A stretch of 64,000 nucleotides of DNA, taken from NCBI GenBank assembly GCA_002269645.1, contig NIVC01003461.1, positions 32,756 through 96,755 of the forward strand, given 5' to 3'. Of the stretch, positions 12,312 through 42,400 are shown one piece after another. Below the pieces are notes generated by a model. That model ran no database searches, was not told where the DNA came from, and saw only the letters and a program-made list of their open reading frames with translations. The position numbers and the translations under genes were made by a program. The DNA is from Macrostomum lignano (taxonomy: Eukaryota). Within the stretch, counting starts at the first letter, position 1. Every line of letters starts with the position of its first letter.

Positions 12312-12985
12312 CTCATTTGCAGGTGATAGATTAGGGGTGAGATTCTCATCTAATTCTCATTTGCAGGTGCTAGATTAGGGGTGAGATTCTCATCTAAGTC
12401 TCATTTGCAGGTGCTAGATTAGGGGTGAGATTCTCATCTAAGTCTCATTTGCAGGTGCTAGATTAGGGGTGAGATTCTCATCTAAGTCTTCAATTTGCAG
12501 GTGATAGATTAGGGATGAGATTCTCATCTAAGTCTCTTATTTGCAGGTGATGGATTAGGGGTGAGATCTCATCTAAGTCTCTCATTTGCAGTGATAGATT
12601 AGGGATGAGATTCTCATCTAAGCCTCTCATTTGCAGGTGCTAGATTAGGGGTGAGATTCTCATCTAAGTCTCTCATTTGCAGGTGATGGATTAGGGATGA
12701 GATTCTCATCTAAGCCTCTCATTTGCAGGTGATAGATTAGGGGTGAGATTCTCATCTAAGTCTCCCATTTGCAGGTCATAGATTAAGGGTGAGATTCTCA
12801 TCTAAGGCTCTCATTTGCAGGTGATAGATAAGGGTGAGATTCTCATCTAAGTCTCATTTGCAGGTGATAGATAAGGGTGAGATTCTCATCTAAGTCTCAT
12901 TTGCAGGTGATAGATCTAGGGGTGAGATTCTCATCCAAGTCTCCCATTTGCAGGTGACGAATTACGGTAGGGGTGAGATTCTTAT
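12312..12985 (+). repeat. ~44-bp intronic minisatellite (ctcatttgcaggtgatagattaggggtgagattctcatctaagt), about 15 units, PTCD3 intron 2
   Basis: Tandem units of 44-46 bp. Confidence 0.95.
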
Positions 12986-13789
12986 CTGTAGAGTCTGCCA
13001 GTTGTTGAGAATAGACCTGTGGCTGACCCAAGCCTCCCATTAGCCTAACCCTACATTGTACCCAACCCCGTCACCCCAGGCTCCAAGGCCCAACCGAGTG
13101 GCTGTCGAACCCGGGCCTGCCCCAGGCTGCCCGGCCGGCCTGCTGCCGTCTCTGCTGGCCGACCTGTGCTCGAATCCGCCCGATCCGCTGGACACCGCCA
13201 GTCCGGACGACCTGGCCTTCTTCCCCACAGCTGCCTACCTGGCCTGCCGGGTCTACGCCAGCCGGGCCCTGAGCGAGCAGCTCGATTCGTTGCTGCACTC
13301 CGGCGCTTTTGTGTCCACTCTGGGCACCTTCAAAGAGCGTCGCATAGTGTACGAATATCACCTGTTGAATCTGCTCACCGATCGGGGCGCCGATTTAGAT
13401 GCTGCCATTAGTTACTATTCGGATCGGATCGAGCCGTCTGGCGTTGCTATGCTCAGCCATCTGATCCGGCTGATGCGAAAGTGCGTAGCTAAGCAGGCCG
13501 TGCACCGGCTGCCCGGCCTCATGGCTCGGTGCTTGCAGTTTGCCGACTCACCAATCCCAACATATTGGCGCCCGCAAAGCTTTCTATCGGTGCGCTGAAA
13601 TTGTTGAAGAAATGTTTGCTGATCAGCATCCGGCTGTCCGAGATCCCCAGTTTATGGCCGAACTGCGCAGGTCTCTGGCCGCTTCTCAGATGTGCTCAAC
13701 AATGAATTCGTGTACGATCGGAGGCGGCGACGGGACGATGCGGTGAGATTTTTATGGGGGATTTTGAGAGGATGGAGAGTTAGGAGAGA

Positions 13790-14600
13790 GGAACGGGAGA
13801 GTGACGAGAAAGGAACGGAAGAGTGACGAGAGAGAAACGGAGAGTGACGAGAGAGAAACGGGAGAGTGACAAGAGAGAAACAGAGAGTGACCAGAGAGGA
13901 ACGGAAGGGTGACGAGAGAGGAACGGGAGAGTGACGAGGGAGGAACGGGAGAGTGACCAGAGAGGAACGGAGAGTGACGAGGGAGGAACGGTAGAATGAC
14001 GAGAGGAGCGGGAGAGTGACGAGAGAGGAACGGAAGGGTGACGAGAGAGGAACGGGAGAGTGACGAGGGAGGAACGGGAGAGTGACCAGAGAGGAACGGG
14101 AGAGTGACGAGGGAGGAACGGTAGAATGACGAGAGGAGCGGGAGAGTGACGAGAGAGGAACGGTAGAATGACGAGAGGAGCGGGAGAGTGACGAGAGAGG
14201 AACGGTAGAATGACGAGAGGAGCGGGAGAGTGACGAGAGAGGAACGGTAGAATGACGAGAGGAGCGGGAGAGTGACGAGGGAGGAACGGGAGAGTGACGA
14301 GAGAGGAACGGTAGAATGACGAGAGGAGCGGGAGAGTGACGAGAGAGGAACGGTAGAATGACGAGAGGAGCGGGAGAGTGACGAGAGAGGAACGGTAGAA
14401 TGACGAGAGGAGCGGGAGAGTGACGAGGGAGAACGGTAGAATGACGAGAGAGCGGAGAGTGACGAGAGAGGAACGGTAGAATGACGAGAGGAGCGGAGAG
14501 TGACGAGAGAGGAACGGTAGAATGACGAGAGGAGCGGGAGAGTGACGAGAGAGGAACGGTAGAATGACGAGAGGAGCGGAGAGTGACGAGAAGAGGGATG
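13790..14600. repeat. Purine-rich 42-bp minisatellite (two ~21-bp halves) in PTCD3 intron 3
   Basis: Unit gggagagtgacgagagaggaacggtagaatgacgagaggagc. Confidence 0.95.
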
Positions 14601-15029
14601 AGCAGGGCAGCAAAGGGAAGAAGGCAAGCAGGAATCGAGGAATTCAGACAGTCCAAGTATTTTATTCAATCCAACCCGAGCCCCTGAACTCTCCGCCATC
14701 CAGCTGCAGATCAGCAGCATCCAGTCGGAGATGACGTCTGACCACGCGGCCACCCTGATCCGCCTGGCCTCGCAGCTCCCGGCCGACTCGGACAGAGAGC
14801 AGGCGCTGCGCCTTGCTAACCAGCTGGACAAGTGCCTGACAGATAAGCGAGTGTCCAGCCTAAGCTACTGCCTGGCTTTGCTAGAACTGGCCGCCAAAAA
14901 TGAGACAGAGCCGCCTAGCTATGAGCAGAGGGCCGCCTGCCTAGCCGTGATTGAGCTGTTGGACAGGACGGCTCACGAATTTCAGGTTAGATACAGTTAA
15001 CAATTATCGCATTTTCGATAGTAGTGTTT

Positions 15030-16928: not shown

Positions 16929-18186
16929 TTCGGTTGGGGAGAAAGTTCTTGCAGTTTCTAGAACTTTCTGTCAAACTGAGTTTTTTTAAAACAAAAAGCC
17001 AATTAAGAAACAAAATGATCACTATCACAATCTATCACCTTCTGCCATTTTTGGGCAGACTCATAATACTGTCACTGTAAAATTTCTCTGGCTTTGAAGT
17101 GAAAAAGTTGTTCAGCCAGTTATCGAGCTCTTCATTATCAGCGAAGGTTTTGTTGTTCAAGGCGTTGGCCAGAGACAAAAACAGGTGATAGTCGCTTGGT
17201 GCCAAGTCTGGTGAATACAGTGGATGGGGCACCAATTCCCAGCCAAGGTCCAATAGCTTTTGGCGAGTCACCCTAGCAGTGTGTGGACGAGCCTTATCAT
17301 GGAGGAATCGTACCGGGCCATGGTTCGGACGCTTCTGTGTGATGGCGGCGGCCAATCAGTCCAGCTGTTGGCAGTATAGGTTGGCCGTAATCGATGTGTT
17401 GGTGGCAGCAGTTCGTAGTACATGACGCCCTTGCAGTCCCACCACACACACAGCATGACCTTGCGTGGGTGGAGTCCGGCCTTTGACTGCAGCTCAGGCG
17501 TCGCGTCAGCATCAACCCATAATTGTCGACGTTTGATGTTGACGTACAGGCACCACTTTTCATCGCCCGTAATGATGGACTTCAGCCAGTTGTGCGTGCG
17601 CCTGTAGGAGAGGAGAGAAGTGGCCAACTCTGCCCTGCGCTCCTTGTCCCAATCTGACAATTGGTGGGTACCCATTGTGCCAGCTTGTACACCTTGCCCA
17701 GCTGATGCAAATGACTGGTGACCATTTTATGGTCTACATCAAGGACTAGCACTAACTCACGCGTGGTTTGCCGAGGGTCAAGCCTCTACGAGTGTGCGCA
17801 GCCAGTCGTCATCAACCTTGGAGGGATGACCTGACCGGGACAAATCTTCGAGGTTAAAATTTCCCTGGTGAAACTGCGCAAACCAATCCTGGGCGGTGCG
17901 TTCAGATCGAGACACGGTACCCGCACCAAATGCAGCGTTGATACGGCGGCTGGATTCTGCAGCTGACAGTCCAGATTTGAAGTCATAGAGCAGGAGACCA
18001 CGAATATAGGCCCGAGAGAGATCCATAATGCTGGTGACTAGTGAGTAATCTCTTTGGTTTAAATAGCATGTTAGAATCACACACACCCACCCTCAATATA
18101 TACCCACACAGCCGGGCTCTGGAATGTTCCAGAAAGTTCTTAGACAGAAAGTTCTAGAAACCGCGGGAACTTTCTCCCCAACCGAA
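16929..18186 (-). mobile_element. Mariner (Tc1/mariner, DD34D-type) DNA transposon, 1258 bp, transposase decayed
   Basis: 44-bp TIRs (16929-16972 and 18143-18186, 3 mismatches) flanked by TA. Transposase from ATG 18026 to about 17035 has an HTH, ITGDEKW, HDKARPH and YSPDLAPSDYHLF. In-frame TGA at 17778 and a frameshift near 17400. Confidence 0.95.
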
Positions 18187-22606: not shown

Positions 22607-23325
22607 CCTATTTACTCTATTGCTCGCTCGCCGTGCACACGCACTGAATTTGGGGTGTTGCTCGATCGATAATTTCACATCCGATCTAGAAAAACAAACT
22701 TTACTACTGAAAGTAGCAAGCACGCATTTTTGCGAGTAACAGTTCTTGTTATTCTAGTATTTGTGGTATGTCGATCCTTTTTTATCATCAATATGAAATA
22801 TTTTAATTTTAAATAGAAAAAGGGAGTACATAGCTTAGTCACTAGAACAACAGAGGATTAGTTAAGCGCATTCCCATCAAAGTGATTAGCCGGTGATAAT
22901 TTAATAAATGTATAAAAATTAAACTAAATATCGCACACGGAGCATTCTACTTCTAGTGGTAGCAGCTAAGGAGAAAAAAGCTATTCTTTAAGAGAGGAGA
23001 ACTACTGTTACAAAATGTCATTCTCAAAAGTAATTATGCTTTCAATCGGCTCTAGCTGTTGTCATAGAGAGAAAACGCGCCTGCCCAGAAAACAGACGCC
23101 GATCAATCGCCATCATTGTTAGTAGTGAAAACTGCATTACCAGCATCCCGGATGGCACAAGTTTCTTTAGTGTTTATAAAATAACCATTTATTTGTTCAT
23201 TTATTAAAAAATACACTTTAGTATAGTTTGCTTGGCTTGTGGTTGTAGCTAGCGAATATTCTGCTTAGAAATTGTACACATGCTGGTCAAAGGCCCCGGC
23301 CCCACCCTCAACGGTTCAGTCAGAG

Positions 23326-24744
23326 TCACTCTGGCCGCCAGTCGGCAGCCTTGGAGGCCACATCTCGCAGCCGGCAGTACAGGGCAATGTTGGACTGCAG
23401 AAAGCTCAGGCTAACGTAGTTCATGCCGTGCTTCTGGCAGAACTCCTTAACAAGAGGCGCCGCAGCTCTCAGGTGATGCCTAGGCAGCCTGGGATACAGG
23501 TGGTGCTCCAATTGGAACTGCAGTCCGCCGTGAAACCAGTCCATCCAGGTTGGACAATCGACATCCATAGTTGAGGCCACCTGAGATCGGATGAAATGGC
23601 CGCCGTCGTCAGAATCGACCGTGCCTAATCCGTTCTTATAGTCGCACACGGCCATGGGGAAATGGGAGATGCAGATTTGCACGTGGAGCAGGCCGGATAC
23701 GGCGTGGCTGAGCAACACGAAAGCAATTGTCTGCGGCCAGGTAGGCAGCTGGCAGGCCAAGGTAAGGTACCAGATAAAGAATGTTGACATGGAGACCAGC
23801 TCGGCTACTTGAAAGTAGCGCCGTTCCCGTTTCTGATTCAAAGCGATCAGGTGCTCGTAGGAGCGAATGTACAGGTAGAAGCGAGCCACGCACATCACCG
23901 GATAGAATACCAGGTGTTGCACTCGCATCAACAGCCGAAAGAATGGCTTGCGCTTGCCGTCGTAAAATGTAGATATCGGAGAGCTGAAGAACTCGTCAGT
24001 GATGGCTAGCAGCGGCATGTGCTGAATGTCCGGATCGTCTGTCACCGAGTTGGTGACCAGATGGTGGACATTGTGGTTGAGCTTCCACCAGCCGATGCTG
24101 ATGCCCAGCAGGGCGTTGCCAAGGAAGGCGGCCAGTCGGTGGTCGGTGAGGCGGTTGTGGGTCACAGCAGTGTGGCCCAGGTCGTGGCCAACAAAAGCCA
24201 GCTGCTGCAGATAGATGCCCAGGATACAGGCAGCCAGCACAACCCGGATAGGCCAGGCGGACTCTGGCGGGCACAGTACGCAGGCAACGGAGGCCGCTAG
24301 CAGGCAGAGAATGCGCAGCACCAGTCCCAGCTCCCAAGTTGGCTTAGTCTGAAACAGGCCCATCCGATGAAATTTGTCGCGCAAGGCGAAATAATCGCGG
24401 ACAATGGGGCTCTGCTGCTGCTGATGCTTGACATCGCCGCAGCTAAACGGCTGGTTGTCCGCCTCGTTAACATTGTCATCTAATTCGCATGGCTCAATCT
24501 GGCCAATACAATAAGTTGGCAGGAATTTTCTAACCAATTCCGGATGGTACATGCTGAACTGTACGCTGGCATCCTGGCCCCGACAGTTCTCTAAGGCCAG
24601 GGCGCCGCCCGGGTGGCGGCACAGAAAATTGGCAACGTCGTAGGCGCGACCGTCAATAGTGATGACGCAGCTGTTTGGCCGGCGTTTGGCCGCGTCAAGA
24701 TCCGATTGAGACAAACGGCGGCAGGACTGGCGGCCTTGGCACAT
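23326..24744 (-). CDS. Cytochrome b5-fused front-end fatty acid/sphingolipid desaturase (delta-8 sphingolipid desaturase-like), intronless, 472 aa
   Basis: HPGG heme motif; His boxes HDLGH, HNVHH and QLEHH; WWKLNHNVHHLVTN...DPDIQHMP; WFHGGLQFQLEHHLYPRLPRH. Confidence 0.93.
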   Translation of the reverse strand: MCQGRQSCRRLSQSDLDAAKRRPNSCVITIDGRAYDVANFLCRHPGGALALENCRGQDASVQFSMYHPELVRKFLPTYCIGQIEPCELDDNVNEADNQPFSCGDVKHQQQQSPIVRDYFALRDKFHRMGLFQTKPTWELGLVLRILCLLAASVACVLCPPESAWPIRVVLAACILGIYLQQLAFVGHDLGHTAVTHNRLTDHRLAAFLGNALLGISIGWWKLNHNVHHLVTNSVTDDPDIQHMPLLAITDEFFSSPISTFYDGKRKPFFRLLMRVQHLVFYPVMCVARFYLYIRSYEHLIALNQKRERRYFQVAELVSMSTFFIWYLTLACQLPTWPQTIAFVLLSHAVSGLLHVQICISHFPMAVCDYKNGLGTVDSDDGGHFIRSQVASTMDVDCPTWMDWFHGGLQFQLEHHLYPRLPRHHLRAAAPLVKEFCQKHGMNYVSLSFLQSNIALYCRLRDVASKAADWRPE

Positions 24745-25268
24745 TGCTCTTGGCTGATTTAAGTATCGTTAACAATAAATAATTAGGCTTAAGTTGTAAA
24801 TTAACTCGGGTCGTTTGCACAGTCTGTCAGCAAGCCGGGTGACTGGAGCGCAGCGCTTCTCTGTCTTATAGATTAAAAAATATTCTTTTTATTAGAAGCC
24901 GAGAGGGGTAGTGCGGGCCGTGCGGCCGTCTGCAATGAGGACAGTTGAGTCATGCGCACGAGTGCACAAAAGCGGTAAGACATGGCGCCATTCACTATAT
25001 AGCTAAGAGACAGCAAAGTATGGTCCCACGAGTTCTCTAACCTGATATGAATTCATTGCTTTGAACTGTTGAGTGTTCTTCGTAGCTTTACTTCTACGAG
25101 CAGCATGCAAAGAATGAATGCATTTTTTGTCACTAAGCGTTTAATTGAAATGCGCCTGCCAGTAGCCGGGTGTGAGCCAAATAAAATACACAGGTTTGCC
25201 TCCTCTGCCTCGCCAATATAAAAATGCAAGAGGCAGTCTTAGCTGAAATTTTCAGCCCCAAATGCATG

Positions 25269-25340
25269 TGGCCACGCGCGGAATCGAACCAGGGGTTGTG
25301 GGGCGAGAGTCGGACACCGCTTGAGCTGCTCTTTCCCCCT
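25269..25340 (-). ncRNA. tRNA-derived sequence (SINE head or tRNA pseudogene)
   Basis: Minus strand has an A-box-like gcagctcaagcgg and a perfect B-box ggttcgattcc at tRNA-like spacing, but the acceptor stem does not pair. Confidence 0.4.
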
Positions 25341-26210: not shown

Positions 26211-29166
26211 TCAATCACACTCATCCTCGTCACTGCTCACAATCCCGTCATAGAGCTGCTCTAATAATTTTAATCGTTGCAACAGGTTGCAGAACCACAT
26301 TCGATTCTCGGCAGACTTCAAAGCGACGGCAGACTTCAAAGTGTCGGCAGACTTCAAAGCGTCGGCAGACTTCAAAGTGTCGGCAGACTTCAAAGCGTCG
26401 GCAGACTTCAAAGCGTCGGCAGACTTCAAAGCGGCACGCGTTCTAATTAAAGCAGACATTAAAGCATCTACAGGATCGCCGCTCTCTGTTCCAACAAAAT
26501 CAGAAATAGTTGTTCGTAAAGCGTCGAAATTGGCACAAGCCGAGTCTAGCAGTTCGCTTAGGTAGGACGCGAACTCGCGACCTGCAAAACAGACGAATTT
26601 ACAGTATATTTTTGCCTACATATAGCTATGGAAATTAAGCAGTATTTGAGACTGCTAAAAAAGAATCCCCAAACAAGAAATCATTTTTTCTGCTAAGGTT
26701 TCCTAGATGGGCTGGGCTGCCGGAAACAAGTATCAATAATTCTCATTATTTAGGAAAGGTTCAACAGGCGCACCAGCAGACAGGTGCAAAAATAATTGCT
26801 TAAGTATTTAACTGGCCCTAATAAAATCAATTTGTACCTTTCAATTTGTGTAATTAATCTGCGGTTTGCGTCAGTCAGAAAAACCGATATTGTGCATGTG
26901 GTATTGGGTTGAACACGTCACTACGTCAACAGTTCAAAGTCAAAATAACAAAGTTTCTTTTAGCAATTTGCAGATATTTTGGAACTTTTAAACACGTCAG
27001 ACAAGATATATGAGAATTATGCTGAAGAGAAAAGTTCTCTTATCTGAGCAAATTTCGAAGTTATGAAATGTCAACGTTGCGAAAGCGACCAATTTTATGT
27101 TAACTACAATTTTGTTTAGCGGATGACTCTTCCTGAACCTGACTAATTCTATATTTTCCAGCAAAGGCTACACACCTTCTGGCTCCTCCGAGATTGCGTA
27201 ATCGCACAGAACTCCGTGATCGAAACCAACGCTATCCAAGAAGGCGTAAAACATGGCATAGCAACTGCCTAGCAACAGCGAATCCCAGCTGGCCCTAGCC
27301 AGACGAAGCTGACCTAACAGAAAGTGCAACAGATCCGAGTCCTTGGCCGACAGCAGGTGCACAAGCTCCGTAGGCGACAGTTGAGTCTGCAGCTGACGGA
27401 GCAGCTCCTGGCACCGCGGCGTCGGCGGAAGCAACAGCAACAGGCGAATAAAAGTGCAAATGAACTTTCTTTGAAGCTGACATTGATCGATTTGATGAAG
27501 CGAAGTCAGCTGAACTGATGGCCGCTTGCCAATCATGATTAGCAAAACTGTTGCCAATTCAATCAGAGCTTGGCGATCTACCAGCCATGCTGTACTCTTT
27601 GAGCACGTGCTCAACAGTTGCACACTAGCCAGGCACAGCAGCTGCCTCGATGTCAGCATTGCTGCGCCAATAGAATCCTCATCGTCAGAGTCTGACTCGT
27701 CGACAGAATTAACTAGAAATAAATTAGTAAAGTAAGGTCGAAGTCGTTAGCGGTCTCATAGTTTGATTATAACTGCTCCAAGATTGTAAACCAGCCTGTC
27801 TATCTGTCTGTCTATCTATCTGTCTATCCGTCTGTCTGTCTGTCTGTCCGTCTCTCTGTCTGTCTGTCCGTCTGTCTGTCTGTCTGTCTGTTCTTTAGCT
27901 TCAAAACTAGGCACTAGGAATTATGTTACACTACTGTCAGTAGACAAAGTGTTTTATCGCATTGACTGGACAACACGAGGTGACTTTACTTCAAGAACGA
28001 ATATTTTTACCTAAAAATTGAAACAACCTCAGCAGAACGCCAGTCAAAGCTTCCGGAAGCGACTCAGGAGCCTCTATCGCCCCGATGCGCTTTCGAAGAG
28101 CCAGCAGGCATTCGCCAAGAGCAAACGCTTCCAGACGATAGAGATCACTGCTTGAGTCAGGATCCTGCAGTTGGGAGAGACGCCAACAAACCAGCTCAGT
28201 CAGACGGCTGATATCTACGGATACGTCACCCTTTCGCTTGGCAATATCGAGCAAATCAGCCAGACCAATGGCCGCCAAGGGGTCAGTCGAATGTTGGCAT
28301 CGTATTAAAATTTCGTTAATTATTGCTTGGAGTAGCTCAACAGAGCGAGCCGCTTCGATAACCGTCTCAGTAACTGCGCGCAGACGCAGAGCATCGAACC
28401 AAGCTTCACTTTCAATGGCGAATCGTGCGCAATTGTGTTTAATGGCGCCAACTTGAATAAATCTTCCTGCTTCTAAATTTCCATTTTTAGAAATATTCTC
28501 CGATTGTGATTTACTTACAACGGCATCACTTCCGGTTTCTAGTTTGCTTTGAGCGGAGTCATTTCCGGTGTCCAATTTTCTTCCAACGGCATCGCTTCCG
28601 GTTTCTAATTTGGTAAGAACTGAGTCCTTTCCGGTGTCCAATTTACTTCCAACGGCATCACTTCCGGTTTCTAATTTGGTAAGAACTGAGTCCTTTCCGG
28701 TGTCCAATTTACTCCCAACGGCGTCACTTCCGGTTTCTAATTTGCATCGAACGGAGTCCTTTCCGGTGTCCAATTTACTTCCAACGGCGTCACTTCCGGT
28801 TGGTACCTTGCTTCTAAAAACATCACTTCCGGTTCCTAATCTACCTCCATTTAATGCATCACTTCTACTGGTGTCCAAATTACTTTCAACGGTGTCACTT
28901 CCGCTTTGTAATTTTGTTGCACTGGGTTCACTTCCGATGTTAAAATTGATTTTAACGACATCACTTCCTTGTTTTGTTCGAACGTGTTTCAAGTTACTTT
29001 TGCTGCTATTTCCAATCTCCTGCCTGACTGGCTTACGGAGTGCACAAGCCGAGTATTCGACTTTAACGCTGACTATTAAATCATCTTTCGAATTGTTGGC
29101 GGCGAGAAGTTTCTTACGCAAATCCGTCAGACAAAAGTGTTGCGCAACAATTTCGGCAGATTTTTC
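26211..29166 (-). CDS. LINS1: Protein Lines homolog (LINS1-like); exons 29166-28011, 27712-27176, 26581-26211; no genomic ATG for exon 1
   Basis: Junction phases join in frame (FLG|..V-NSVDESD, EPEG|..G-REF). FYAFLDSVGFDHGVLCDYAISEE matches the Lines motif GFDxxVLLDFLISxET. LSAKDSDLL resembles EQDDDML. The C-terminal LIRTRAALK...LLQRLKLLEQLY resembles Lines_C. Confidence 0.8.
26310..26435 (-). repeat. 18-bp coding minisatellite, 7 units (ALKSAD)n, inside the last Lines exon
   Basis: ggcagacttcaaag recurs every 18 bp from 26310 to 26418. Confidence 0.95.
27796..27891. repeat. (TCTG/TCTA)n microsatellite in Lines intron
   Basis: Direct inspection. Confidence 0.95.
28520..28980 (-). repeat. 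66-bp (2x33) coding repeat GSDAVGSKLDTGKDSVLTKLET in Lines exon 1
   Basis: The translation shows about 4 near-perfect 22-aa units plus degenerate 11-aa units. Confidence 0.9.
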
Positions 29167-29749: not shown

Positions 29750-30890
29750 GGAGAGTGGGGTGGTTGGGGAGGGTCTCTTGCAGAGTGGGGTGGTTGGGCA
29801 GGGGGTTTTGGGAGAGGGGTGCTTGGAGAGGGTCTCTTGCAGAGTGGGGTGGTTGGGCAGGGGGTTTTGGGAGAGGGGTGCTTGGAGAGGGTCTCTTGCA
29901 GAGTGGGGTGGTTGGGGAGGGTCTCTTGCAGAGTGGGGTGGTTGGGGAGGGTCTCTTGCAGAGTGGGGTGGTTGGGGAGGGTCTCTTGCAGAGTGGGGTG
30001 GTTGGGGAGGGTCTCTTGCAGAGTGGGGTGGTTGGGCAGGGGGTTTTGGGAGAGGGGTGGTTGGGAAGGGTCTCTTGCAGAGTGGGGTGGTTGGGGAGGG
30101 TCTCTTGCAGAGTGGGGTGGTTGGGGAGGGTCTCTTGCAGAGTGGGGTGGTTGGGGAGGGTCTCTTGCAGAGTGGGGTGGTTGGGGAGGGTCTCTTGCAG
30201 AGTGGGGTGGTTGGGGAGGGTCTCTTGCAGAGTGGGGTGGTTGGGGAGGGTCTCTTGCAGAGTGGGGTGGTTGGGGAGGGTCTCTTGCAGAGTGGGGTGG
30301 TTGGGCAGGGGGTTTTGGGAGAGGGGTGGTTGGGAAGGGTCTCTTGCAGAGTGGGGTGGTTGGGGAGGGTCTCTTGCAGAGTGGGGTGGTTGGGGAGGGT
30401 CTCTTGCAGAGTGGGGTGGTTGGGGAGGGTCTCTTGCAGAGTGGGGTGGTTGGGGAGGGTCTCTTGCAGAGTGGGGTGGTTGGGGAGGGTCTCTTGCAGA
30501 GTGGGGTGGTTGGGGAGGGTCTCTTGCAGAGTGGGGTGGTTGGGCAGGGGGTTTTGGGAGAGGGGTGGTTGGGAAGGGTCTCTTGCAGAGTGGGGTGGTT
30601 GGGGAGGGTCTCTTGCAGAGTGGGGTGGTTGGGGAGGGTCTCTTGCAGAGTGGGGTGGTTGGGGAGGGTCTCTTGCAGAGTGGGGTGGTTGGGGAGGGTC
30701 TCTTGCAGAGTGGGGTGGTTGGGGAGGGTCTCTTGCAGAGTGGGGTGGTTGGGGAGGGTCTCTTGCAGAGTGGGGTGGTTGGGGAGGGTCTCTTGCAGAG
30801 TGGGGTGGTTGGGGAGGGGGTTGTGCAGAGTGAGGTGGTTGGGGAGGGTCTCTTGCAGAGTGGGGTGTCTGGGGAGGTGGTTTTACAGAG
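29750..30890. repeat. G-rich 30-bp minisatellite (ggggtggttggggagggtctcttgcagagt) with periodic variant units
   Basis: Tandem 30-bp units; source of the long spurious ORFs at 29669-31416. Confidence 0.97.
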
Positions 30891-30978: not shown

Positions 30979-33900
30979 CTAACGGCCCTTATTTCCGTCA
31001 TCATCATCCTCGGACTCGGAATCCGGCACCGTCCAGGTGCTGTCGTTGCGAACGCGCGAACTGGCTTGCGCCTCCGCCTGGGCCTCGGCAGCTTCGACAG
31101 CCATCCAGGCGGCCTCGTCGTCGTCATTATCGTTGACTCCCTTCGCCGAAAACTTGTCCTCGTCGTCGTCGTCACCGTCGTAGCCGCCGCGCGCCCAGCT
31201 GCTGCCGGCGGCTCCCCGGTCGCGCAGCTCCGCGGCCGCCCTGGACAGACGTTTGTGCGCGTCCGACTGCGTTTCGGACAGGCGATGGCCGGCGTTGGCC
31301 AGGAAAGCGCTGGCCGATTCGGCCAGGTTAGAGAGGCGGGCCAGGCTGGCCGTGTCAGACTTGTCGATGCGCTTGGCCTGTTGTTTTTGGCGAATCATGG
31401 AGAGACGCAAAGATAGGGGCATGCGCTTTGTAAACTACTTTTGATCAGTAGTATTGCTCTTATCAGGCTAAGAGAAGTTCAGCGGTTAACGTTAGTGCGC
31501 ACGCTAAGGCCTATTTTTCCTAATAAAAACTTCCCAATATCTGTAAACACTACTATCGAAAATGCCGATAATTGTTAACTGTATCTAACCTGAAATTCGT
31601 GAGCCGTCCTGTCCAACAGCTCAATCACGGCTAGGCAGGCGGCCCTCTGCTCATAGCTAGGCGTCTGTCTCATTTTGGCGGCCAGTTCTAGCAAAGCCAG
31701 GCAGTAGCTTAGGCTGGACACTCGCTTATCTGTCAGGCACTTGTCCAGCTGGTTAGCAAGGCGCAGCGCCTGCTCTCTGTCCGAGTCGGCCGGGAGCTGC
31801 GAGGCCAGGCGGATCAGGGTGGCCGCGTGGTCAGACGTCATCTCCGACTGGATGCTGCTGATCTGCAGCTGGATGGCGGAGAGTTCAGGGGCTCGGGTTG
31901 GATTGAATAAAATACTTGGACTGTCTGAATTCCTCGATTCCTGCTTGCCTTCTTCCCCTTTGCTGCCCTGCTCATCCCTCTTCTCGTCACTCTCCGCTCC
32001 TCTCGTCATTCTACCGTTCCTCTCTCGTCACTCTCCCGCTCCTCTCGTCATTCTACCGTTCCTCTCTCGTCACTCTCCCGCTCCTCTCGTCATTCTACCG
32101 TTCCTCTCTCGTCACTCTCCCGCTCCTCTCGTCATTCTACCGTTCCTCCCTCGTCACTCTCCCGCTCCTCTCGTCATTCTACCGTTCCTCTCTCGTCACT
32201 CTCCCGCTCCTCTCGTCATTCTACCGTTCCTCTCTCGTCACTCTCCCGCTCCTCTCGTCATTCTACCGTTCCTCTCTCGTCACTCTCCCGTTCCTCCCTC
32301 GTCACTCTCCCGCTCCTCTCGTCATTCTACCGTTCCTCTCTCGTCACTCTCCCGCTCCTCTCGTCATTCTACCGTTCCTCTCTCGTCACTCTCCCGCTCC
32401 TCTCGTCATTCTACCGTTCCTCTCTCGTCACTCTCCCGCTCCTCTCGTCATTCTACCGTTCCTCCCTCGTCACTCTCCCGTTCCTCTCTGGTCACTCTCC
32501 CGTTCCTCCCTCGTCACTCTCCCGTTCCTCTCTCGTCACCCTTCCGTTCCTCTCTCGTCACTCTCCCGCTCCTCTCGTCATTCTACCGTTCCTCCCTCGT
32601 CACTCTCCCGTTCCTCTCTGGTCACTCTCCCGTTCCTCCCTCGTCACTCTCCCGTTCCTCTCTCGTCACCCTTCCGTTCCTCTCTGGTCACTCTCCTGTT
32701 TCTCTCTTGTCACTCTCCCGTTTCTCTCTCGTCACTCTCCCGTTTCTCTCTCGTCACTCTTCCGTTCCTTTCTCGTCACTCTCCCGTTCCTCTCTCCTAA
32801 CTCTCCCATCCTCTCAAAATCCCCCATAAAAATCTCACCGCATCGTCCCGTCGCCGCCGCCTCCGATCGTACACGAATTCATTGTTGAGCACATCTGAGA
32901 AGCCGGCCAGAGACCTGCGCAGTTCGGCCATAAACTGGGGATCTCGGACAGCCGGATGCTGATCAGCAAACATTTCTTCAACAATTTCAGCGCACCGATA
33001 GAAAGCTTTGCCGGGCGCCAATATGTTGGGATTGGTGAGCTCGGCAAACTGCAAGCACCGAGCCATGAGGCCGGGCAGCCGGTGCACGGCCTGCTTAGCT
33101 ACGCACTTTCGCATCAGCCGGATCAGATGGCTGAGCATAGCAACGCCAGACGGCTCGATCCGATCCGAATAGTAACTAATGGCAGCATCTAAATCGGCGC
33201 CCCGATCGGTGAGCAGATTCAACAGGTGATATTCGTACACTATGCGACGCTCTTTGAAGGTGCCCAGAGTGGACACAAAAGCGCCGGAGTGCAGCAACGA
33301 ATCGAGCTGCTCGCTCAGGGCCCGGCTGGCGTAGACCCGGCAGGCCAGGTAGGCAGCTGTGGGGAAGAAGGCCAGGTCGTCCGGACTGGCGGTGTCCAGC
33401 GGATCGGGCGGATTCGAGCACAGGTCGGCCAGCAGAGACGGCAGCAGGCCCGGCCGGGCAGCCTGGGGCAGGCCCGGGTTCGACAGCCACTCGGTTGGGC
33501 CTTGGAGCCTGGGGTGACGGGGTTGGGTACAATGTAGGGTTAGGCTAATGGGAGGCTTGGGTCAGCCACAGGTCTATTCTCAACAACTGGCAGACTCTAC
33601 AGATAAGAATCTCACCCCTACCGTAATTCGTCACCTGCAAATGGGAGACTTGGATGAGAATCTCACCCCTAGATCTATCACCTGCAAATGAGACTTAGAT
33701 GAGAATCTCACCCTTATCTATCACCTGCAAATGAGACTTAGATGAGAATCTCACCCTTATCTATCACCTGCAAATGAGAGCCTTAGATGAGAATCTCACC
33801 CTTAATCTATGACCTGCAAATGGGAGACTTAGATGAGAATCTCACCCCTAATCTATCACCTGCAAATGAGAGGCTTAGATGAGAATCTCATCCCTAATCC

Positions 33901-35639
33901 ATCACCTGCAAATGAGAGACTTAGATGAGAATCTCACCCCTAATCTAGCACCTGCAAATGAGAGGCTTAGATGAGAATCTCATCCCTAATCTATCACTGC
34001 AAATGAGAGACTTAGATGAGATCTCACCCCTAATCCATCACCTGCAAATAAGAGACTTAGATGAGAATCTCATCCCTAATCTATCACCTGCAAATTGAAG
34101 ACTTAGATGAGAATCTCACCCCTAATCTAGCACCTGCAAATGAGACTTAGATGAGAATCTCACCCCTAATCTAGCACCTGCAAATGAGACTTAGATGAGA
34201 ATCTCACCCCTAATCTAGCACCTGCAAATGAGAATTAGATGAGAATCTCACCCCTAATCTATCACCTGCAAATGAGTATCTTCCAGACAAACTCACTTAT
34301 CAAGCAGAGAATTCTTGAGCTGATCGGCGTAGGCAGCCCGCAGTGCGGCAGTGCCGGTGGCCAGACTAAGCCGAGTCTCCACCCCACGCTCGCGCATCTC
34401 GGCCAGCAGACTGCACACCAGTTTCGCTCGCCCACCGTCTGGCGCATCCTTGGCCAGGGCCAGGCCGGACAGCAATGCCCGATAGGCGCTGGCGTCCGGT
34501 TGGCCGGGCAACCGGCGGAAGGCGGCCAGAACGGCCGGCCAGCTGCGGCGGTGCGCGCCAACGGCTAGCAGGGCGGCAACGTGGCTCTCGGCGTCCAGCT
34601 GGGGATCTTCGGCCACCTCAGCGTACAGATCCAAGCATTCGGCATAGGCGCCATGCCGGCAGTGGGCCTTCAGCATAGCAGCTTTGGCGGCCAGGCTGAC
34701 TGGCTGGGCGAGACTGCGATAGACGGCTCGGGCCGGATTGTCCGAAGCCGTCCAGGCGGCCGCCAGCTCGGCCATGGCCGGGGCAACGAGGGGCCGATCG
34801 GCGAAGTAGATCTCCTCCGGGCTGATGTCGCGGAGCGGCGGATCCGAGCCGGCGTGATAGGCGAGCAGCTCCAGTAGGCTCTGCCTGCGGAGCGAGGTAG
34901 GGGGCGAACACCGAGTTGAGTTGAGACCGAAGCCCCCGAAACTAATGTATCAATGAGCGCATTTGTATAAGGGCGCTACGGAATAAAGGCGCCTGTTATA
35001 AGGGCGCACTGCCATACGCGCAAAACTGTTATAAGCGCGCATTGCAATACGCGCAAAACTGTTACAAGCGCGCACTGCCATACGCGCAAACTGTATAACA
35101 TCAAGCATGAAATAGCGGGCATATATGCAGCAGAATCCTCACTTGACATCGTCGCTAACTCCGGAACCGTCACTAATCAGCTTATTGTACATCCGCCAGC
35201 TCAGATCCACCTGTTCCAAATCGATTAGCAATCTCAGATTCTCCTCGTTGTTCTCCAGCCCGTCAACAGATCTCAGCGGCCGCCAAGCCGGCACAGGCGG
35301 GCACTCCATGTTCAACTGGGCCAGCTGTGCCGCGTCCGATTGCAGGAATCGCCTGGCCAAGTTTCGGCCAGACCGTCTGGCCAGCATCAGGTCGCCTTGG
35401 CGGTAGCGCAGGAACAAGCTATCGTCGATGGAGTAGTGCGGAACGGCGTCAGCCTCTACGCTGACGGTGCCGGCTAGGCATTTCAACACCGTGAACTCGT
35501 CGCGTTCAACTGGACTGGGCAGCTGGTTGCGCAGCTGGGGATCCGGGACTCGGCTAGCCTGGAAGCTCCGCCGCTGACGGCAGCACCGACCGCCTCCGCT
35601 GCCGCTGGCTGCCAGCCTCAGGGCGCGTTGAAGCAGCAT
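30979..35639 (-). CDS. PTCD3: PTCD3 / mitochondrial ribosomal protein mS39, about 808 aa (exons 35639-35143, 34884-34297, 33508-32839, 31862-31590, 31377-30979)
   Basis: N-terminus TVLKCLAGTVSVEADAVPHYSIDDSLFL...LARRSGRNLARRF matches the PTCD3 AVLQALASTV...DDPYL...LAKKSGENVAKF pattern. Also SLLELLAYH, helical PPR-like body and acidic tail. Exon lengths 497+588+670+273+399 keep the frame. The exon 4 acceptor is less certain. Confidence 0.88.
31975..32800. repeat. 42-bp pyrimidine-rich (top strand) minisatellite, PTCD3 intron 3
   Basis: Mirror of 13790-14600. Confidence 0.95.
33604..34277 (-). repeat. ~44-bp minisatellite, PTCD3 intron 2
   Basis: Mirror of 12312-12985. Confidence 0.95.
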
Positions 35640-35680
35640 TCGTCCTTTGGTGTACTGCGGAGTGTACAGAGTGTTATCTC

Positions 35681-38489: not shown

Positions 38490-38528
<39 letters not shown>

Positions 38529-38556
38529 GACTTGTCCGCCTGTCTTAGTGTCTTAG

Positions 38557-38605
<49 letters not shown>

Positions 38606-38682
38606 GACTTGTCCGCCTGTCTTAGTGTCTTAGTGTCTTAGTGTCTGTCTGTCTGACTTGTCCGCCTGTCTTAGTGTCTTAG

Positions 38683-38735
<53 letters not shown>

Positions 38736-38812
38736 GACTTGTCCGCCTGTCTTAGTGTCTTAGTGTCTTAGTGTCTGTCTGTCTGACTTGTCCGCCTGTC
38801 TTAGTGTCTTAC

Positions 38813-38865
<53 letters not shown>

Positions 38866-39427: not shown

Positions 39428-42400
39428 TAGTGTCTGTCTGTCTGTCTGTCTGACTTGTCCGCCTGTCTTAGTGTCTTAGTGTCTTAGTGTCTGTCTGTCT
39501 GTCTGTCTGTCTGTGTGTCTTAGTGTCTTAGTGTCTTAGTGTCTGTCTGTCTGTCTGTCTGTGTCTGTCTGTCTGTCAGCTGTGCCATGTGGATTTCTAC
39601 ACCAGCTGGGCCACAGTCAGCTCACCTGAAAGGCCAGCCGCAGGCAGGCAACGGGCATAAAAGCTTCGGCCGTACCCATCAGGCAGTACTGGGGCACCTG
39701 CCACATTATGCTAACATTAGCTGCCGTATAATTCATATTGCCAATTTGCTGTTGAACATAGTCCACAGGCCAGAGATTGGTTGAATTGCCCCACAGGACG
39801 CTGAGCCGGTAGGACTCGAGCACGCCGGCGCAGAGCACGGAGGCCAAGGCGATGGACATGCCTAATAGGATCTGCGTAGCCAGACTGGGGTGCTTGCCCC
39901 GCCGCTCAAGCCAGGGGAATACCAGCTTAGTCAATAGCGGAATCAGCGCTATGATCACCACAATGTCGCACAGCGATAGCCAAGCCGGCGGAATTGTCCG
40001 GTAGCGGGCGCGGAAAATGTTCGCTATTGAGCCGTCCAGCTGCAGGCGGAGGTGCAGGCCCTGGCGGCGGGGTTCATAGTGGGGTAATGCAGTCACTGAT
40101 CAGTCAGTCTCAAACCATCAGAAGTCACTCAGTCAATGATCAGTCACCCTCAAACCATCAGAAGTCACTCAGTCAATGATCAGTCACTCTCAAACCATCA
40201 GAAGTCACTCAGTCAATGATCAGTCACTCTCAAACCATCAGAAGTCACTCAGCCAATGATCAGTCAGTCTCAAACCATCAGAAGTCACTCAGTCAATGAT
40301 CAGTCACTCTCAAACCATCAAAAGTCACTCAGTCACTGATCAGTCACCCTCAAACCATCAGAAGTCACTCAGCCAATGATCAGTCAGTCTCAAACCATCA
40401 GAAGTCACTCAGTCACTGATCAGTCACTCTCAAACCATCAGAAGTCACTCAGCCAATGATCAGTCACTCTCAAACCATCAAAAGTCACTCAGCCAATGAT
40501 CAGTCACTCTCAAACCATCAAAAGTCACTCAGCCAATGATCAGTCACCCTCAAACCATCAAAAGTCACTCAGTCAATGATGAGTCACTCTCAAACCATCA
40601 AAAGTCACTTAGCTAATGATCAGTCACCCTCAAACCATCAAAAGTCACTCAAGTCAATGATCAGTCACTCTCAAACCATCAAAAGTCACTTAGCTAATGA
40701 TCAGTCACCCTCAAACCATCAAAAGTCACTCAAGTCAATGATCAGTCACTCTCAAACCATCAAAAGTCACTCAGTCAATGATCAGTCACTCTCAAACCAT
40801 CAAAAGTCACTCAGTCAATGATCAGTCACTCTCAAACCTTCAAAAGTCACTCAGTCAATGATCAGTCACTCTCAAACCATCAGAAGTCACTCAGTCAATG
40901 ATGAGTCACTCTCAAACCATCAAAAGTCACTCAGTCAATGATCAGTCACTCTCAAACCATCAAAAGTCACTCAGTCAATGATCAGTCACTCTCAAACCAT
41001 CAGAAGTCACTCAGTCAATGATGAGTCACCCTCAAACCATCAGAAGTCACTCAGTCAATGATCAGTCACCCTCAAACCATCAGAAGTCACTCAGTCAATG
41101 ATCAGTCACCCTCAAACCATCAAAAGTCACTCAGTCAATGACCAGTCACTCTCAAACCATCAAAAGTCACTACATAAAACCGCAACTACATATCCCATCA
41201 CATTTTAACACCAGACAGCAATAACAGACGCATAATAAATGTTACCTGCACCAGATAGGTACTCTGCATTTGAAAATACAGCAGCCAATAGGGTATAATG
41301 CTGACAAAGATGAGTACAACTCTAAGCAGCGCCCGAACGTCGTGCACCTCGCCCTCGGTGAAGCGGCCGCCGTGACGAGCGCAATCCAGCCAGTCGTCGT
41401 ACGCGGCCGCATGCAATCGCATTGGCGCAGAATCGCCCGAACCGCTGCCGCTATTATTCGAGTCGGATTCGCCATCAGCCAGCAGCCTCCGCTTCCGCTG
41501 CCTGCGCAACCGGAAGCTGGCTGACACGGCCGCAGCCAGCAGGCGCACCACCCTAGTCAGCAGGCTGCCAGCCGGCTTGCGCAGTCTAAACATTGGCCGG
41601 CAGGCTACAAAGGCTAATGACGCTATCGTCATGGCAACCGGCGGCACCAGGTAACCGGCTAGTCGGCCATCTTTGCCAAGATTCTGCTGAGTGTAGGTTA
41701 AAAAGAAATAAGCGGCAAACGAGCCAACATTGCAGGCCCAGTAGAACCAGTTGAAGAAGCGGCTCTGCTCAACAGGGTCTTTGATTTGTTGAGCGCCCAG
41801 CGGGGATAAATTGGCTTTGAGGGCGCCGCTGCCGATGGCGAGGCAGCAGAGGCTGGCGATCACGATCGGGGAGCAGTTCTGCTCGAACATGTTGCCGCCT
41901 GTGGAATTCTCGTCCTGGATGAGCTTGCTGCAAATGTTGCCGAGTTGTTGATGCGGAACAGAAATTTGATTAAACAATTTCCCGGGACTAAATTTTTAAT
42001 AAGAAACTTCCAGGCATGAAATAGGGTAGGAGAATTAATTCCCCAGGTAAAATCAGGGAGAATAATTACCTAAATAAAATCGGGGAGAATAATTCCCCAA
42101 GTAAAATCGGGGAACTTAAATCCCCAGGTAAAATAGGAAAGAATAATTTCCCAGGTAAAATAGGAAAGAATAATTCCCCAGGTAAAATAGGAAAGAATAA
42201 TTTCCAAGGTAAAATAGGAAAGAATAATTTCCCAGGTAAAATAGGAAAGAATAATTCCCCAGGTAAAATAGGAAAGAATAATTTCCAAGGTAAAATAGGA
42301 AAGAATAATTCCCCAGGTAAAATAGGAAAGAATAATTCCCCAGGTAAAATACGAAAGAATAATTCCCCAGGTAAAATACGAAAGAATAATTCCCCAGGTA

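What the first reader, a model, noticed from the sequence alone, without database searches (positions are those of the whole stretch)
23326..24744. Intronless desaturase with fungal/plant sphingolipid delta-8-type motifs in an animal gene cluster
Seen: HDLGH, GWWKLNHNVHHLVTN, DPDIQHMPLLAI and WFHGGLQFQLEHHLYPRLPRH; no introns, while SLC15, PTCD3 and Lines nearby are interrupted. Established: these boxes resemble fungal and plant SLD enzymes (WWKxxHNxHH, DPDIQHLP, WFHGGLQFQ) more than vertebrate FADS1/2 (HDFGH, HFQHH). Delta-8-unsaturated sphingoid bases are known from marine invertebrates. Inference: a candidate animal sphingolipid delta-8 desaturase, possibly horizontally acquired and then captured into a host transcription unit.
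Basis: partly seen in the sequence, partly recalled or inferred. Interest (0 to 1): 0.75.

Follow-up and report, generated by a model that had tools for sequence, protein, structure and literature searches.

The report
Plant/fungal-type sphingolipid desaturase gene in flatworm
The flatworm Macrostomum lignano carries an intact, intronless gene for a cytochrome-b5-fused lipid desaturase of the kind that plants, fungi and protists use to desaturate sphingolipids, a kind not reported from bilaterian animals in the papers read here; its exact substrate and how the worm came to have it remain unproven.

Summary
Window 23326-24744 (minus strand) is one uninterrupted 472-codon ORF with a cytochrome b5 domain (HPGG), a fatty-acid-desaturase domain and the quoted His boxes.

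The window is Macrostomum lignano contig NIVC01003461.1. The gene lies downstream of the same multi-exon host genes (PTCD3/mS39-like, then a 675-aa gene) on three contigs, and a fourth contig holds a further copy. This is not contamination.

The protein belongs to the sphingolipid-delta8 (SLD) / plant-delta6 branch of front-end desaturases:
- 38-39% identity and about 325 bits to plant and chytrid SLD-type proteins;
- 27% identity and 154 bits to vertebrate FADS2.

Only one relative exceeds 50% identity among about 15 billion proteins: a transcript-like contig at 62%. Against it, dN/dS is 0.22.

Horizontal transfer is not shown. The worm clade is as far from every eukaryotic supergroup as those groups are from each other. 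No donor clade has bootstrap support, codon composition matches the host, and homologues elsewhere are commonly intronless too. Published work places cnidarian genes in this branch, so old vertical retention with losses is at least as likely.

Substrate (sphingoid base or fatty acid), expression and membership of a shared transcription unit could not be tested.

Verdict: new member of a known kind, moderately interesting.

The parts
23326..24744 (-). Complete intronless CDS, 472 aa, of a cytochrome-b5-fused front-end desaturase (NCBI: hypothetical protein BOX15_Mlig009045; near-identical copies PAA55136.1 and PAA50566.1).
24496..24690 (-). Cytochrome b5 domain (residues 19-83). The heme-binding HPGG motif is at 24604-24615. 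His44 and His67 are invariant across 101 homologues and are inferred here to be the two axial heme ligands.
   Evidence: Pfam PF00173, E 3.4e-16. Invariant residues H44 and H67. PDB cytochrome b5 matches by sequence and by fold.
23410..24252 (-). FA_desaturase domain (residues 165-445).
   Evidence: Pfam PF00487, E 3.3e-35. AlphaFold2 model with mean pLDDT 90.2.
24172..24186 (-). His box 1, HDLGH (residues 187-191).
   Evidence: H187, D188 and H191 are invariant in 101 homologues
24061..24075 (-). His box 2, HNVHH (residues 224-228), inside GWWKLNHNVHHLVTNS.
   Evidence: H224, H227 and H228 are invariant
23500..23514 (-). His box 3 with the front-end signature Q in place of H: QLEHH (residues 411-415).
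   Evidence: Q411, H414 and H415 are invariant
24184..24342 (-). First hydrophobic hairpin (residues about 135-187, predicted TM1-TM2).
   Evidence: Hydropathy. Helices 135-157 and 164-190 in the model.
23665..23808 (-). Second hydrophobic hairpin (residues about 313-360, predicted TM3-TM4).
   Evidence: Hydropathy. Helices 312-330 and 336-358 in the model.
24769..24771 (-). In-frame TAA 27 nt upstream of the ATG. The reading frame cannot extend further 5' without splicing.
23188..23205 (-). Two AATAAA poly(A) signals, 121 and 133 nt after the stop codon. No A-run follows, so there is no retroposition tail.
26211..29166 (-). Upstream co-oriented neighbour: a multi-exon gene for a 675-aa protein with no Pfam domain ('Lines' not confirmed). 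The gap to the desaturase ATG is 1466 bp.
30979..35639 (-). Co-oriented multi-exon PTCD3/mS39-like gene (mitoribosomal PPR protein). Coordinates are approximate.
39617..41977 (-). Co-oriented SLC15/POT (PTR2) transporter exons at 41198-41977 and 39617-40096.

Best explanation
This is a real nuclear gene of Macrostomum lignano, maintained by selection. It encodes an ER-membrane front-end desaturase of the SLD-type branch (the sphingolipid-delta8 / plant-delta6 lineage, 'FE1-S' in PMC5037126).

Inferred mechanism, from the established chemistry of this family:
- The fused N-terminal cytochrome b5 domain (HPGG heme site) takes electrons from NADH-cytochrome b5 reductase.
- It passes them to a di-iron centre held by the three His boxes (HDLGH, HNVHH, QLEHH) on the cytosolic face of a four-helix membrane domain.
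- O2 is activated there, and two hydrogens are removed from a lipid chain.
- The most likely substrate is the long-chain base of ceramide, desaturated at C8-C9 to give delta8-unsaturated sphingoid bases.

Shown here: gene integrity, host integration, family branch, purifying selection and a confident fold.

Inferred: electron route, substrate and regioselectivity.

Origin: the worm lineage is an isolated, deep branch of the family. The gene has been in macrostomid-like worms for a long time. Recent transfer from any sampled organism is excluded. The choice between old vertical retention and old transfer stays open.
For: Integrity:
- One 472-codon ORF with both domains.
- Every residue invariant in 101 homologues is kept, including all eight box histidines plus Q411 and the b5 residues H44 and H67.
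- AlphaFold2 gives mean pLDDT 90.2 and pTM 0.90, with two helical hairpins.
- Fold matches are cytochrome b5 plus long membrane chains (TM 0.5-0.65) in the PDB, and cyt-b5-fused desaturases of giant viruses in BFVD.

Host integration:
- The window is NIVC01003461.1 of GCA_002269645.1.
- The order PTCD3-like, 675-aa gene, desaturase recurs on NIVC01001713.1 and NIVC01002803.1. A fourth copy is on NIVC01003608.1.
- GC3 is 0.71, against 0.60-0.74 in most neighbouring host exons.

Family branch:
- 39% identity / 324 bits to Iris 'delta(8)-fatty-acid desaturase 2-like'.
- 38% / 325 bits to a chytrid protein.
- 35% / 303 bits to a JGI 'sphingolipid 8-(E)-desaturase'.
- 27% / 154 bits to primate FADS2.
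- Most source names among the top hits are delta8.
- The split from FADS2 has 100% bootstrap.

Selection: against the 62%-identical orthologue L003, dN/dS is 0.22 (bootstrap 95% interval 0.16-0.28).

Biological context: delta8-unsaturated sphingoid bases are documented in starfish and squid (PMC2444003).
Against: - No functionally characterised enzyme could be placed in my tree, so labels are source annotations only.
- The same branch includes acyl-lipid delta6 desaturases. Borage delta6 sits there (PMC6010785), and several hits carry 'acyl-lipid (9-3)-desaturase' names. Substrate cannot be read from sequence; PMC5037126 says no sequence rule predicts head-group specificity.
- I found no lipid data for flatworm sphingoid bases.
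- Expression in M. lignano could not be checked. The collection lacks M. lignano transcript contigs even for the housekeeping PNO1-like neighbour.
- dS is saturated (about 1.3), so the dN/dS value is approximate.
- The genomic copies are 99.8-100% identical and say nothing about selection.
- One copy carries a 1-bp deletion.
Confidence: 0.6

Rival explanations
1. Origin rival A: the gene entered the macrostomid lineage by horizontal transfer from a protist, alga or fungus, perhaps via diet or as a retro-copied mRNA, and was then domesticated.
For: - No NCBI-named animal protein appears among the 120 best hits (all at or above 318 bits). The named hits are alveolates, stramenopiles, rhizarians, plants and chytrids.
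- Only one relative exceeds 50% identity in the exhaustive search.
- Published trees place all bilaterian Fads in another clade (PMC6010785).
- The gene is intronless in a genome that averages 4.9 introns per gene (PMC5730564).
- There is precedent in bdelloid rotifers: fed3 is intronless and protist-like, fed4 is fungal-like, and both are flanked by animal genes (PMC10597677).
Against: - No donor is identifiable. Attachment inside the family has 3% bootstrap.
- Distances to plants, fungi, alveolates, stramenopiles and rhizarians are 1.0-1.16. The distances between those groups are 1.06-1.30. A transfer from a sampled lineage would nest inside it.
- GC3 is host-like.
- There is no poly(A) remnant. 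The only flanking direct repeat is 15/17 nt, AT-rich and within chance expectation.
- Homologues are uninterrupted in most environmental contigs, so intron absence is a family trait.
- No IMG/VR relative was found, and giant-virus desaturases are only 17-19% identical.
Confidence: 0.35
2. Origin rival B: the gene is an old eukaryotic SLD-type gene inherited vertically through early animals. It was retained in macrostomid flatworms and lost in most other bilaterians.
For: - The family occurs in all major eukaryotic groups.
- The worm branch is as deep as a supergroup-level split and is not unusually long.
- Cnidarians are reported to have genes clustering with the plant (borage) lineage (PMC6010785).
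- Composition is host-like, and purifying selection has acted over a divergence with saturated dS.
Against: - It requires many independent losses across Bilateria.
- The worm protein is not closer to opisthokont (chytrid, Piptocephalis) proteins than to plant or stramenopile ones: 1.16 against 1.0.
- No animal sequence of this branch could be retrieved here to test monophyly.
- Intron absence in an intron-rich genome is unexpected for an old resident gene.
Confidence: 0.45
3. Function rival: the enzyme is a fatty-acyl (acyl-lipid or acyl-CoA) front-end desaturase, such as a delta6, delta5 or delta4 enzyme working in polyunsaturated fatty acid synthesis, and not a sphingolipid desaturase.
For: - Acyl-lipid delta6 enzymes of plants arose within this same branch (PMC5037126, PMC6010785).
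- Several hits carry 'acyl-lipid delta6-acetylenase / (9-3)-desaturase' or 'acyl-lipid (9-3)-desaturase-like' names.
- Rotifer fed3, an intronless foreign-type gene, proved to be a delta6 enzyme.
Against: - Most source names among the best hits are delta8.
- The similarity is equally high to plant SLD2-like, chytrid and JGI 'sphingolipid 8-(E)-desaturase' proteins.
- From my own knowledge: sphingolipid delta8 desaturation is the widespread and probably ancestral activity of the branch.
Confidence: 0.3
4. The desaturase is the last cistron of a polycistronic, trans-spliced transcription unit shared with the upstream host genes.
For: - Four genes (SLC15/POT, PTCD3-like, the 675-aa gene and the desaturase) are co-oriented on the minus strand.
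- The three-gene order PTCD3-like, 675-aa gene, desaturase is conserved on three contigs.
- In M. lignano, 38.8% of genes are trans-spliced and 6.9% of transcriptional units have several trans-splice sites (PMC5730564).
Against: - The intergenic gaps are long (1466 and about 1810 bp).
- The gene has its own poly(A) signals.
- No RNA evidence was available.
- The orthologous transcript L003 shows no leader-like 5' end.
Confidence: 0.2
5. The gene is contamination, an assembly chimera, or a decaying pseudogene.
For: - One of the four copies has a frameshift.
- The window contains a suspicious near-perfect inverted duplication.
Against: - Three independent contigs carry an intact copy with the same animal neighbours.
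- A 62%-identical orthologue exists, and dN/dS against it is 0.22.
- All catalytic residues are intact.
- The closest non-worm sequence is only 44-46% identical, so no food organism or symbiont matches.
Confidence: 0.03

Closest known systems
Sphingolipid delta8 long-chain-base desaturases of plants and fungi (for example Arabidopsis SLD1/SLD2 and the Borago, Candida and Kluyveromyces SLDs)
   Same: - The same architecture: N-terminal cytochrome b5 with HPGG, then a desaturase domain with HxxxH, HxxHH and QxxHH boxes.
- 38-39% identity over the full length to plant SLD2-like and chytrid proteins.
- Uninterrupted reading frames are the rule among the environmental homologues as well.
   Different: - The host is a bilaterian animal.
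- The b5-desaturase linker carries a low-confidence insertion of about 25 residues (86-112). A short extra loop lies at 367-379.
- No activity data exist.
- It is not nested in either the plant or the fungal clade.
Plant acyl-lipid delta6 desaturases (the borage type) that evolved within the SLD branch
   Same: Same branch and same motifs. This shows that substrate can switch inside the branch (PMC5037126, PMC6010785).
   Different: The worm protein is not inside the plant clade, which has 100% bootstrap without it. No evidence favours a fatty-acyl substrate.
Metazoan FADS family (vertebrate FADS1/FADS2/FADS3; invertebrate 'clade B' Fads)
   Same: The same superfamily and domain fusion. From my own knowledge: FADS3 also acts on sphingoid bases, at delta14.
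   Different: Only 27% identity and 154 bits. The boxes differ (HDYGH, HFQHH, NFQIEHH). The split has 100% bootstrap. The worm protein is not a member.
Cnidarian 'clade A' Fads (Surm et al. 2018, PMC6010785)
   Same: Animal genes reported to cluster with the plant (borage) lineage, and suspected by the authors to be sphingolipid desaturases.
   Different: The sequences could not be retrieved here, so their relationship to the worm gene is untested. The paper places all bilaterian Fads elsewhere.
Bdelloid rotifer fed3 and fed4 (Ribes-Navarro et al. 2023, PMC10597677)
   Same: Front-end desaturases of non-animal type, anchored between animal genes. fed3 is intronless. fed4 showed no activity on polyunsaturated fatty acid substrates.
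   Different: The rotifer genes sit next to identifiable donors (kinetoplastids, fungi). The flatworm gene has no identifiable donor.

Membership tests
Cytochrome-b5-fused front-end desaturases | N-terminal cytochrome b5 domain with an HPGG heme motif | tested here: met
   PF00173 at 19-83, E 3.4e-16. HPGG at 44-47. PDB cytochrome b5 matches.
Cytochrome-b5-fused front-end desaturases | FA_desaturase domain with three His boxes, the third starting with Q (QxxHH) | tested here: met
   PF00487, E 3.3e-35. HDLGH, HNVHH and QLEHH are present, and all are invariant positions in 101 homologues.
Cytochrome-b5-fused front-end desaturases | Two membrane hairpins (four transmembrane helices) bracketing the His boxes | tested here: met
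   Hydropathy peaks at 135-187 and 313-360. Matching helices in a model with pLDDT 90.
SLD-type branch (sphingolipid delta8 / plant delta6; FE1-S) | Closer in sequence to SLD-type proteins than to acyl-CoA FADS | tested here: met
   303-325 bits to SLD-type proteins against 154 bits to FADS2. Corrected distance about 1.0 against about 1.58. 100% bootstrap split.
SLD-type branch (sphingolipid delta8 / plant delta6; FE1-S) | Monophyly with functionally characterised delta8 sphingolipid desaturases | tested here: inconclusive
   Only annotation-labelled sequences were available. The internal topology of the family is a star.
Sphingolipid delta8 desaturase (enzyme function) | Introduces a C8-C9 double bond into the long-chain base of ceramide | not testable with these tools
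   Needs heterologous expression and long-chain-base profiling.
Sphingolipid delta8 desaturase (enzyme function) | The host contains delta8-unsaturated sphingoid bases | not testable with these tools
   No flatworm data were found. Such bases are known in starfish and squid.
Metazoan FADS (FADS1/2/3, clade B) | Groups within the animal FADS clade | tested here: not met
   27% identity. Separated from six vertebrate FADS2 proteins at 100% bootstrap.
Horizontally transferred gene | Nested with support inside a donor lineage | tested here: not met
   3% bootstrap for any sister group. Equidistant from all supergroups.
Horizontally transferred gene | Absent from related animals | tested here: inconclusive
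   No named animal appears in the top 120 hits, and only one relative exceeds 50% identity. The literature reports cnidarian members of the branch, and animal sequences could not be retrieved.
Horizontally transferred gene | Physically integrated among host genes | tested here: met
   Same animal neighbours on three contigs.
Horizontally transferred gene | Foreign composition or insertion scars (poly(A) tail, target-site duplication) | tested here: not met
   GC3 is 0.71, within the host range. No A-run follows the gene. The flanking 17-nt repeat is within chance.
Polycistronic trans-spliced unit of M. lignano | Shared precursor transcript with internal trans-splice sites | not testable with these tools
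   Only co-orientation is seen, and the gap is 1.47 kb. No RNA data were available.

The most novel reading that the evidence does not exclude
A bilaterian animal owns and uses an SLD-type enzyme to make delta8-unsaturated sphingoid bases, having acquired the gene from a now-unsampled microbial eukaryote. This would be the first genetic basis for delta8 sphingoid bases in Bilateria. It would also be an example of lipid-pathway gain by transfer outside rotifers, in an organism where it can be knocked down.
Probability: 0.2. Interest if true: 0.7.

Novelty: new member of a known kind. Interest (0 to 1): 0.42.

Why it matters
Delta8-unsaturated sphingoid bases occur in marine invertebrates (PMC2444003). 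In the papers I could search, no animal enzyme that makes them has been identified. A 2018 survey stated that cytochrome-b5-fused sphingolipid desaturases had not been identified in Metazoa, and it placed all bilaterian Fads in a different clade (PMC6010785).

An intact, selected SLD-type gene in M. lignano gives a direct handle on this question. M. lignano is a flatworm with established transgenesis and an annotated genome (PMC5730564). The open questions it addresses are which enzyme makes these bases in animals, what they do, and whether this desaturase branch is an ancestral animal gene lost many times or a later gain.

If the enzyme proves to be an ordinary fatty-acid desaturase, it would still widen the known desaturase repertoire of flatworms.

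Tried and rejected
1. Contamination was rejected. Three contigs carry the same host neighbours. The nearest non-worm sequence is at most 46% identical.
2. Retroposition scars were sought. There is no poly(A) tract. A 17-nt imperfect direct repeat brackets 1669 bp, but it is AT-rich, matches 15/17 and is expected about 0.5 times by chance. The poly(A) signals lie beyond it. I treat it as chance.
3. A viral vector was considered. No IMG/VR locus matched. Giant-virus cyt-b5 desaturases are 17-19% identical.
4. Closer relatives were sought in JGI metagenomes. The maximum is 41% identity.
5. A sub-region homologue search was meant to surface fragmentary orthologues. It failed technically (14 candidates, the query's own protein not recovered) and is ignored.
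6. Expression was approached through transcript contigs. The collection lacks M. lignano transcripts even for the PNO1-like neighbour, so absence means nothing.
7. I tried to label animal members of the branch. Twenty cluster look-ups and three contig look-ups returned only protists, fungi, algae and environmental samples. The supplements of the two key papers hold no sequences.
8. Paralogue comparison for selection was uninformative. The copies are 99.8-100% identical, flanks included.
9. The run SRR30276804, source of the 62% orthologue, could not be traced to an organism.
10. Rfam, tRNA and NCBIfam scans added nothing.
Only the database proteins it returned were used.
Full report
**What is there**

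Window 23326-24744 (minus strand) is a single ATG-to-stop ORF of 472 codons.

So are HPGG (44-47) and the three His boxes: HDLGH 187-191, HNVHH 224-228 and QLEHH 411-415.
- An in-frame TAA lies 27 nt upstream of the ATG. Two AATAAA signals lie 121 and 133 nt after the stop.
- The protein aligns over residues 4-468 with a plant homologue without any break. The gene is therefore complete and intronless.

**Whose gene it is**

The exact protein is encoded on contigs of assembly GCA_002269645.1. Near-identical copies are named 'hypothetical protein BOX15_Mlig009045g3/g5 [Macrostomum lignano]'. M. lignano is a free-living flatworm: Bilateria, Platyhelminthes, Macrostomorpha. The window is 100% identical to NIVC01003461.1.

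On the minus strand the gene order, from high to low coordinates, is:
- SLC15/POT transporter, with split exons at 41198-41977 and 39617-40096;
- a PTCD3/mS39-like gene;
- a multi-exon gene for a 675-aa protein without any Pfam domain, so 'Lines' is not confirmed;
- the desaturase.

The last three genes recur in the same order on NIVC01001713.1 and NIVC01002803.1. A fourth copy sits near the end of NIVC01003608.1. Contamination is therefore excluded.

GC3 of the gene (0.71) lies within the range of most neighbouring host exons (0.60-0.74). M. lignano genes average 4.9 introns (PMC5730564), so an intronless gene is atypical for this genome.

**Which family branch**

- A search of 5.8 billion clusters gives one hit at 62% identity (P0002). 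Everything else is at or below 44%. The named hits are alveolates, stramenopiles, chlorarachniophytes, plants and chytrids. Most source names are 'delta8-fatty-acid desaturase', and a few are 'acyl-lipid (9-3)-desaturase'.
- An exhaustive HMMER pass over 1.84 billion representatives confirms that P0002 is the only relative above 50% identity.
- JGI metagenomes yield nothing above 41%.
- Pairwise BLASTP gives 324 bits / 39% to Iris SLD2-like, 325 bits / 38% to a chytrid protein and 303 bits / 35% to a JGI 'sphingolipid 8-(E)-desaturase'. It gives only 154 bits / 27% to a primate FADS2.
- I built a neighbour-joining tree of 243 sequences (431 columns, 100 bootstraps). The worm protein pairs with P0002 at 100%, and all SLD-type sequences separate from six vertebrate FADS2 proteins at 100%.

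The protein therefore belongs to the branch that PMC5037126 calls the sphingolipid/acyl-PC cluster of front-end desaturases. It does not belong to the animal FADS family.

**Is it functional?**

- All 33 columns invariant across 101 homologues are retained, including every box histidine and the b5 residues H44 and H67, which I infer to be the heme ligands.
- AlphaFold2 gives mean pLDDT 90.2 and pTM 0.90. It shows a b5 fold, two helical hairpins (135-190 and 312-358) and low confidence only in a linker insertion (about 86-112) and a short loop (374-377).
- In the PDB, the b5 domain matches cytochrome b5. The remainder matches long membrane chains of chloroplast Ycf2/Orf2971-FtsHi complexes, with TM 0.5-0.65. 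By sequence, only the b5 domain has solved relatives.
- P0002 comes from a 1547-nt contig with short UTRs and an ATTAAA near its end, so it looks like an mRNA. Against it, dN is 0.29 and dS is 1.30 (saturated). The ratio is 0.22, with a bootstrap 95% interval of 0.16-0.28. That indicates long-term purifying selection.
- The M. lignano copies themselves are 99.8-100% identical, flanks included, so they are uninformative. One copy has a 1-bp deletion at codon 289.
- Expression in M. lignano could not be tested. The housekeeping PNO1-like neighbour is also found only on genome contigs in the collection.
- The locus-tag style follows the RNA-seq-guided annotation of PMC5730564. That is only an indirect hint of expression.

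**Origin**

Points in its favour:
- no named animal appears among the best hits;
- the gene is intronless in an intron-rich genome;
- bdelloid rotifers offer a documented precedent (PMC10597677).

Points against:
- The worm clade's attachment inside the family has 3% bootstrap, and it joins none of the 19 clades supported at 70% or more.
- Its corrected distances to plants (1.01), stramenopiles (1.02), alveolates (1.06), rhizarians (1.11) and fungi (1.16) equal the distances between those groups (1.06-1.30). It behaves as its own deep lineage.
- Given how densely marine protists are sampled in the databases searched, recent transfer from a sampled donor is excluded.
- Composition is host-like, and there is no poly(A) remnant or convincing target-site duplication.
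- Environmental homologues are uninterrupted over their whole length, so intron absence is typical of the family.
- No viral relative was found. Giant-virus cyt-b5 desaturases are 17-19% identical.

Surm et al. report cnidarian genes clustering with the borage delta6 enzyme, while all bilaterian Fads fall elsewhere. They also note that cyt-b5-fused sphingolipid desaturases had not been identified in Metazoa.

Vertical retention with many losses is thus at least as plausible as an old transfer from an unsampled donor. I could not retrieve animal sequences of this branch to decide between them.

**Transcription unit**

The four genes are co-oriented, and M. lignano does have polycistronic trans-spliced units. 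However, the gap upstream of the desaturase is 1466 bp, the gene has its own poly(A) signals, and no RNA evidence was at hand. The 'capture' idea is untested.

**Function**

By family membership, the most likely activity is delta8 desaturation of the sphingoid long-chain base. Electrons would pass from the fused b5 domain to the di-iron centre. Delta8-unsaturated bases exist in starfish and squid.

The same branch has produced acyl-lipid delta6 enzymes, and no sequence rule predicts head-group specificity. I put the sphingolipid assignment at roughly 0.55-0.6, and a fatty-acyl substrate at about 0.3.

**Verdict**

SLD-type: yes. Animal gene: yes. Horizontal transfer and transcription-unit capture: not shown. 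Activity: untested.
- It is a new member of a known enzyme kind in an unexpected host, and it is experimentally tractable.

Noticed in passing
window 2276-15029 (+) and 31545-44324 (-); it extends beyond the window on contig NIVC01003461.1: A very large, 99-100% identical inverted duplication encloses a unique core of about 16.5 kb that holds the desaturase. The arms are at least 13 kb in the window. PNO1-like copies at contig positions 28.5 kb and 80.6 kb imply arms of about 19 kb or more. The left arm carries a truncated second copy of the PTCD3-like gene and the SLC15 exons. The paralogous contig L002 shows no such arm downstream. It is either a very recent palindromic duplication or a long-read assembly artefact.
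   Followed up: partly
L094 (NIVC01003608.1) 2802-4220: The fourth genomic copy of the desaturase is identical to the window CDS except for a 1-bp deletion at CDS nt 867 (codon 289). The deletion truncates the protein to 298 aa, before His box 3. It is either a null allele or a sequencing indel.
   Followed up: partly
window 53527-56949 (+), inside the GC-rich block at about 53000-57000: A 1140-aa ORF with reverse transcriptase, RNase H and integrase domains: the pol gene of a Ty3/gypsy-type LTR retrotransposon. GC is 66-68%, against about 45% around it.
   Followed up: partly
window 17268-17675 (-): A mariner-type transposase fragment (Pfam Transposase_1) lies in the AT-rich, gene-poor 8 kb downstream of the desaturase.
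   Followed up: no
window 47837-48547 (-) and 61837-62202 (-): Two further host genes: a PNO1-like KH-domain protein (236-aa ORF) and an eIF4E-binding protein exon.
   Followed up: no
window 213-2291, 3048-4562, 5419-6500, 9721-10906, 12313-12957, 29752-30877, 45513-47630 and their mirror copies: Numerous long satellite-like tandem arrays with units of 16, 27, 30, 35, 40 and 46 bp. Several generate long spurious ORFs, for example 9689-10915 and 35674-36900.
   Followed up: no
window 23203-23219 and 24872-24888: An imperfect 17-nt direct repeat (15/17, AT-rich) brackets 1669 bp, about the size of the desaturase mRNA. Chance expectation is about 0.5, and no poly(A) tract precedes the downstream copy, so it is probably coincidence.
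   Followed up: yes
window about 25270-25340 (-): A tRNA-like T-arm motif (GGTTCGATTCC) lies upstream of the desaturase. ARAGORN calls no tRNA and Rfam finds nothing. It may be a SINE remnant.
   Followed up: partly
L009 (ENA contig, 16967 bp), gene at 7142-8683: One of the nearest environmental relatives (P0010, 41-43% identical) sits on a GC-rich (54-60%) contig packed with long uninterrupted ORFs. This suggests a compact protist genome, not an animal one.
   Followed up: partly
BFVD matches to the model: Giant viruses (Yasminevirus, Harvfovirus, Mimivirus LCMiAC01) encode full-length cyt-b5-fused front-end desaturases with the same fold, but they are only 17-19% identical to the worm protein.
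   Followed up: no
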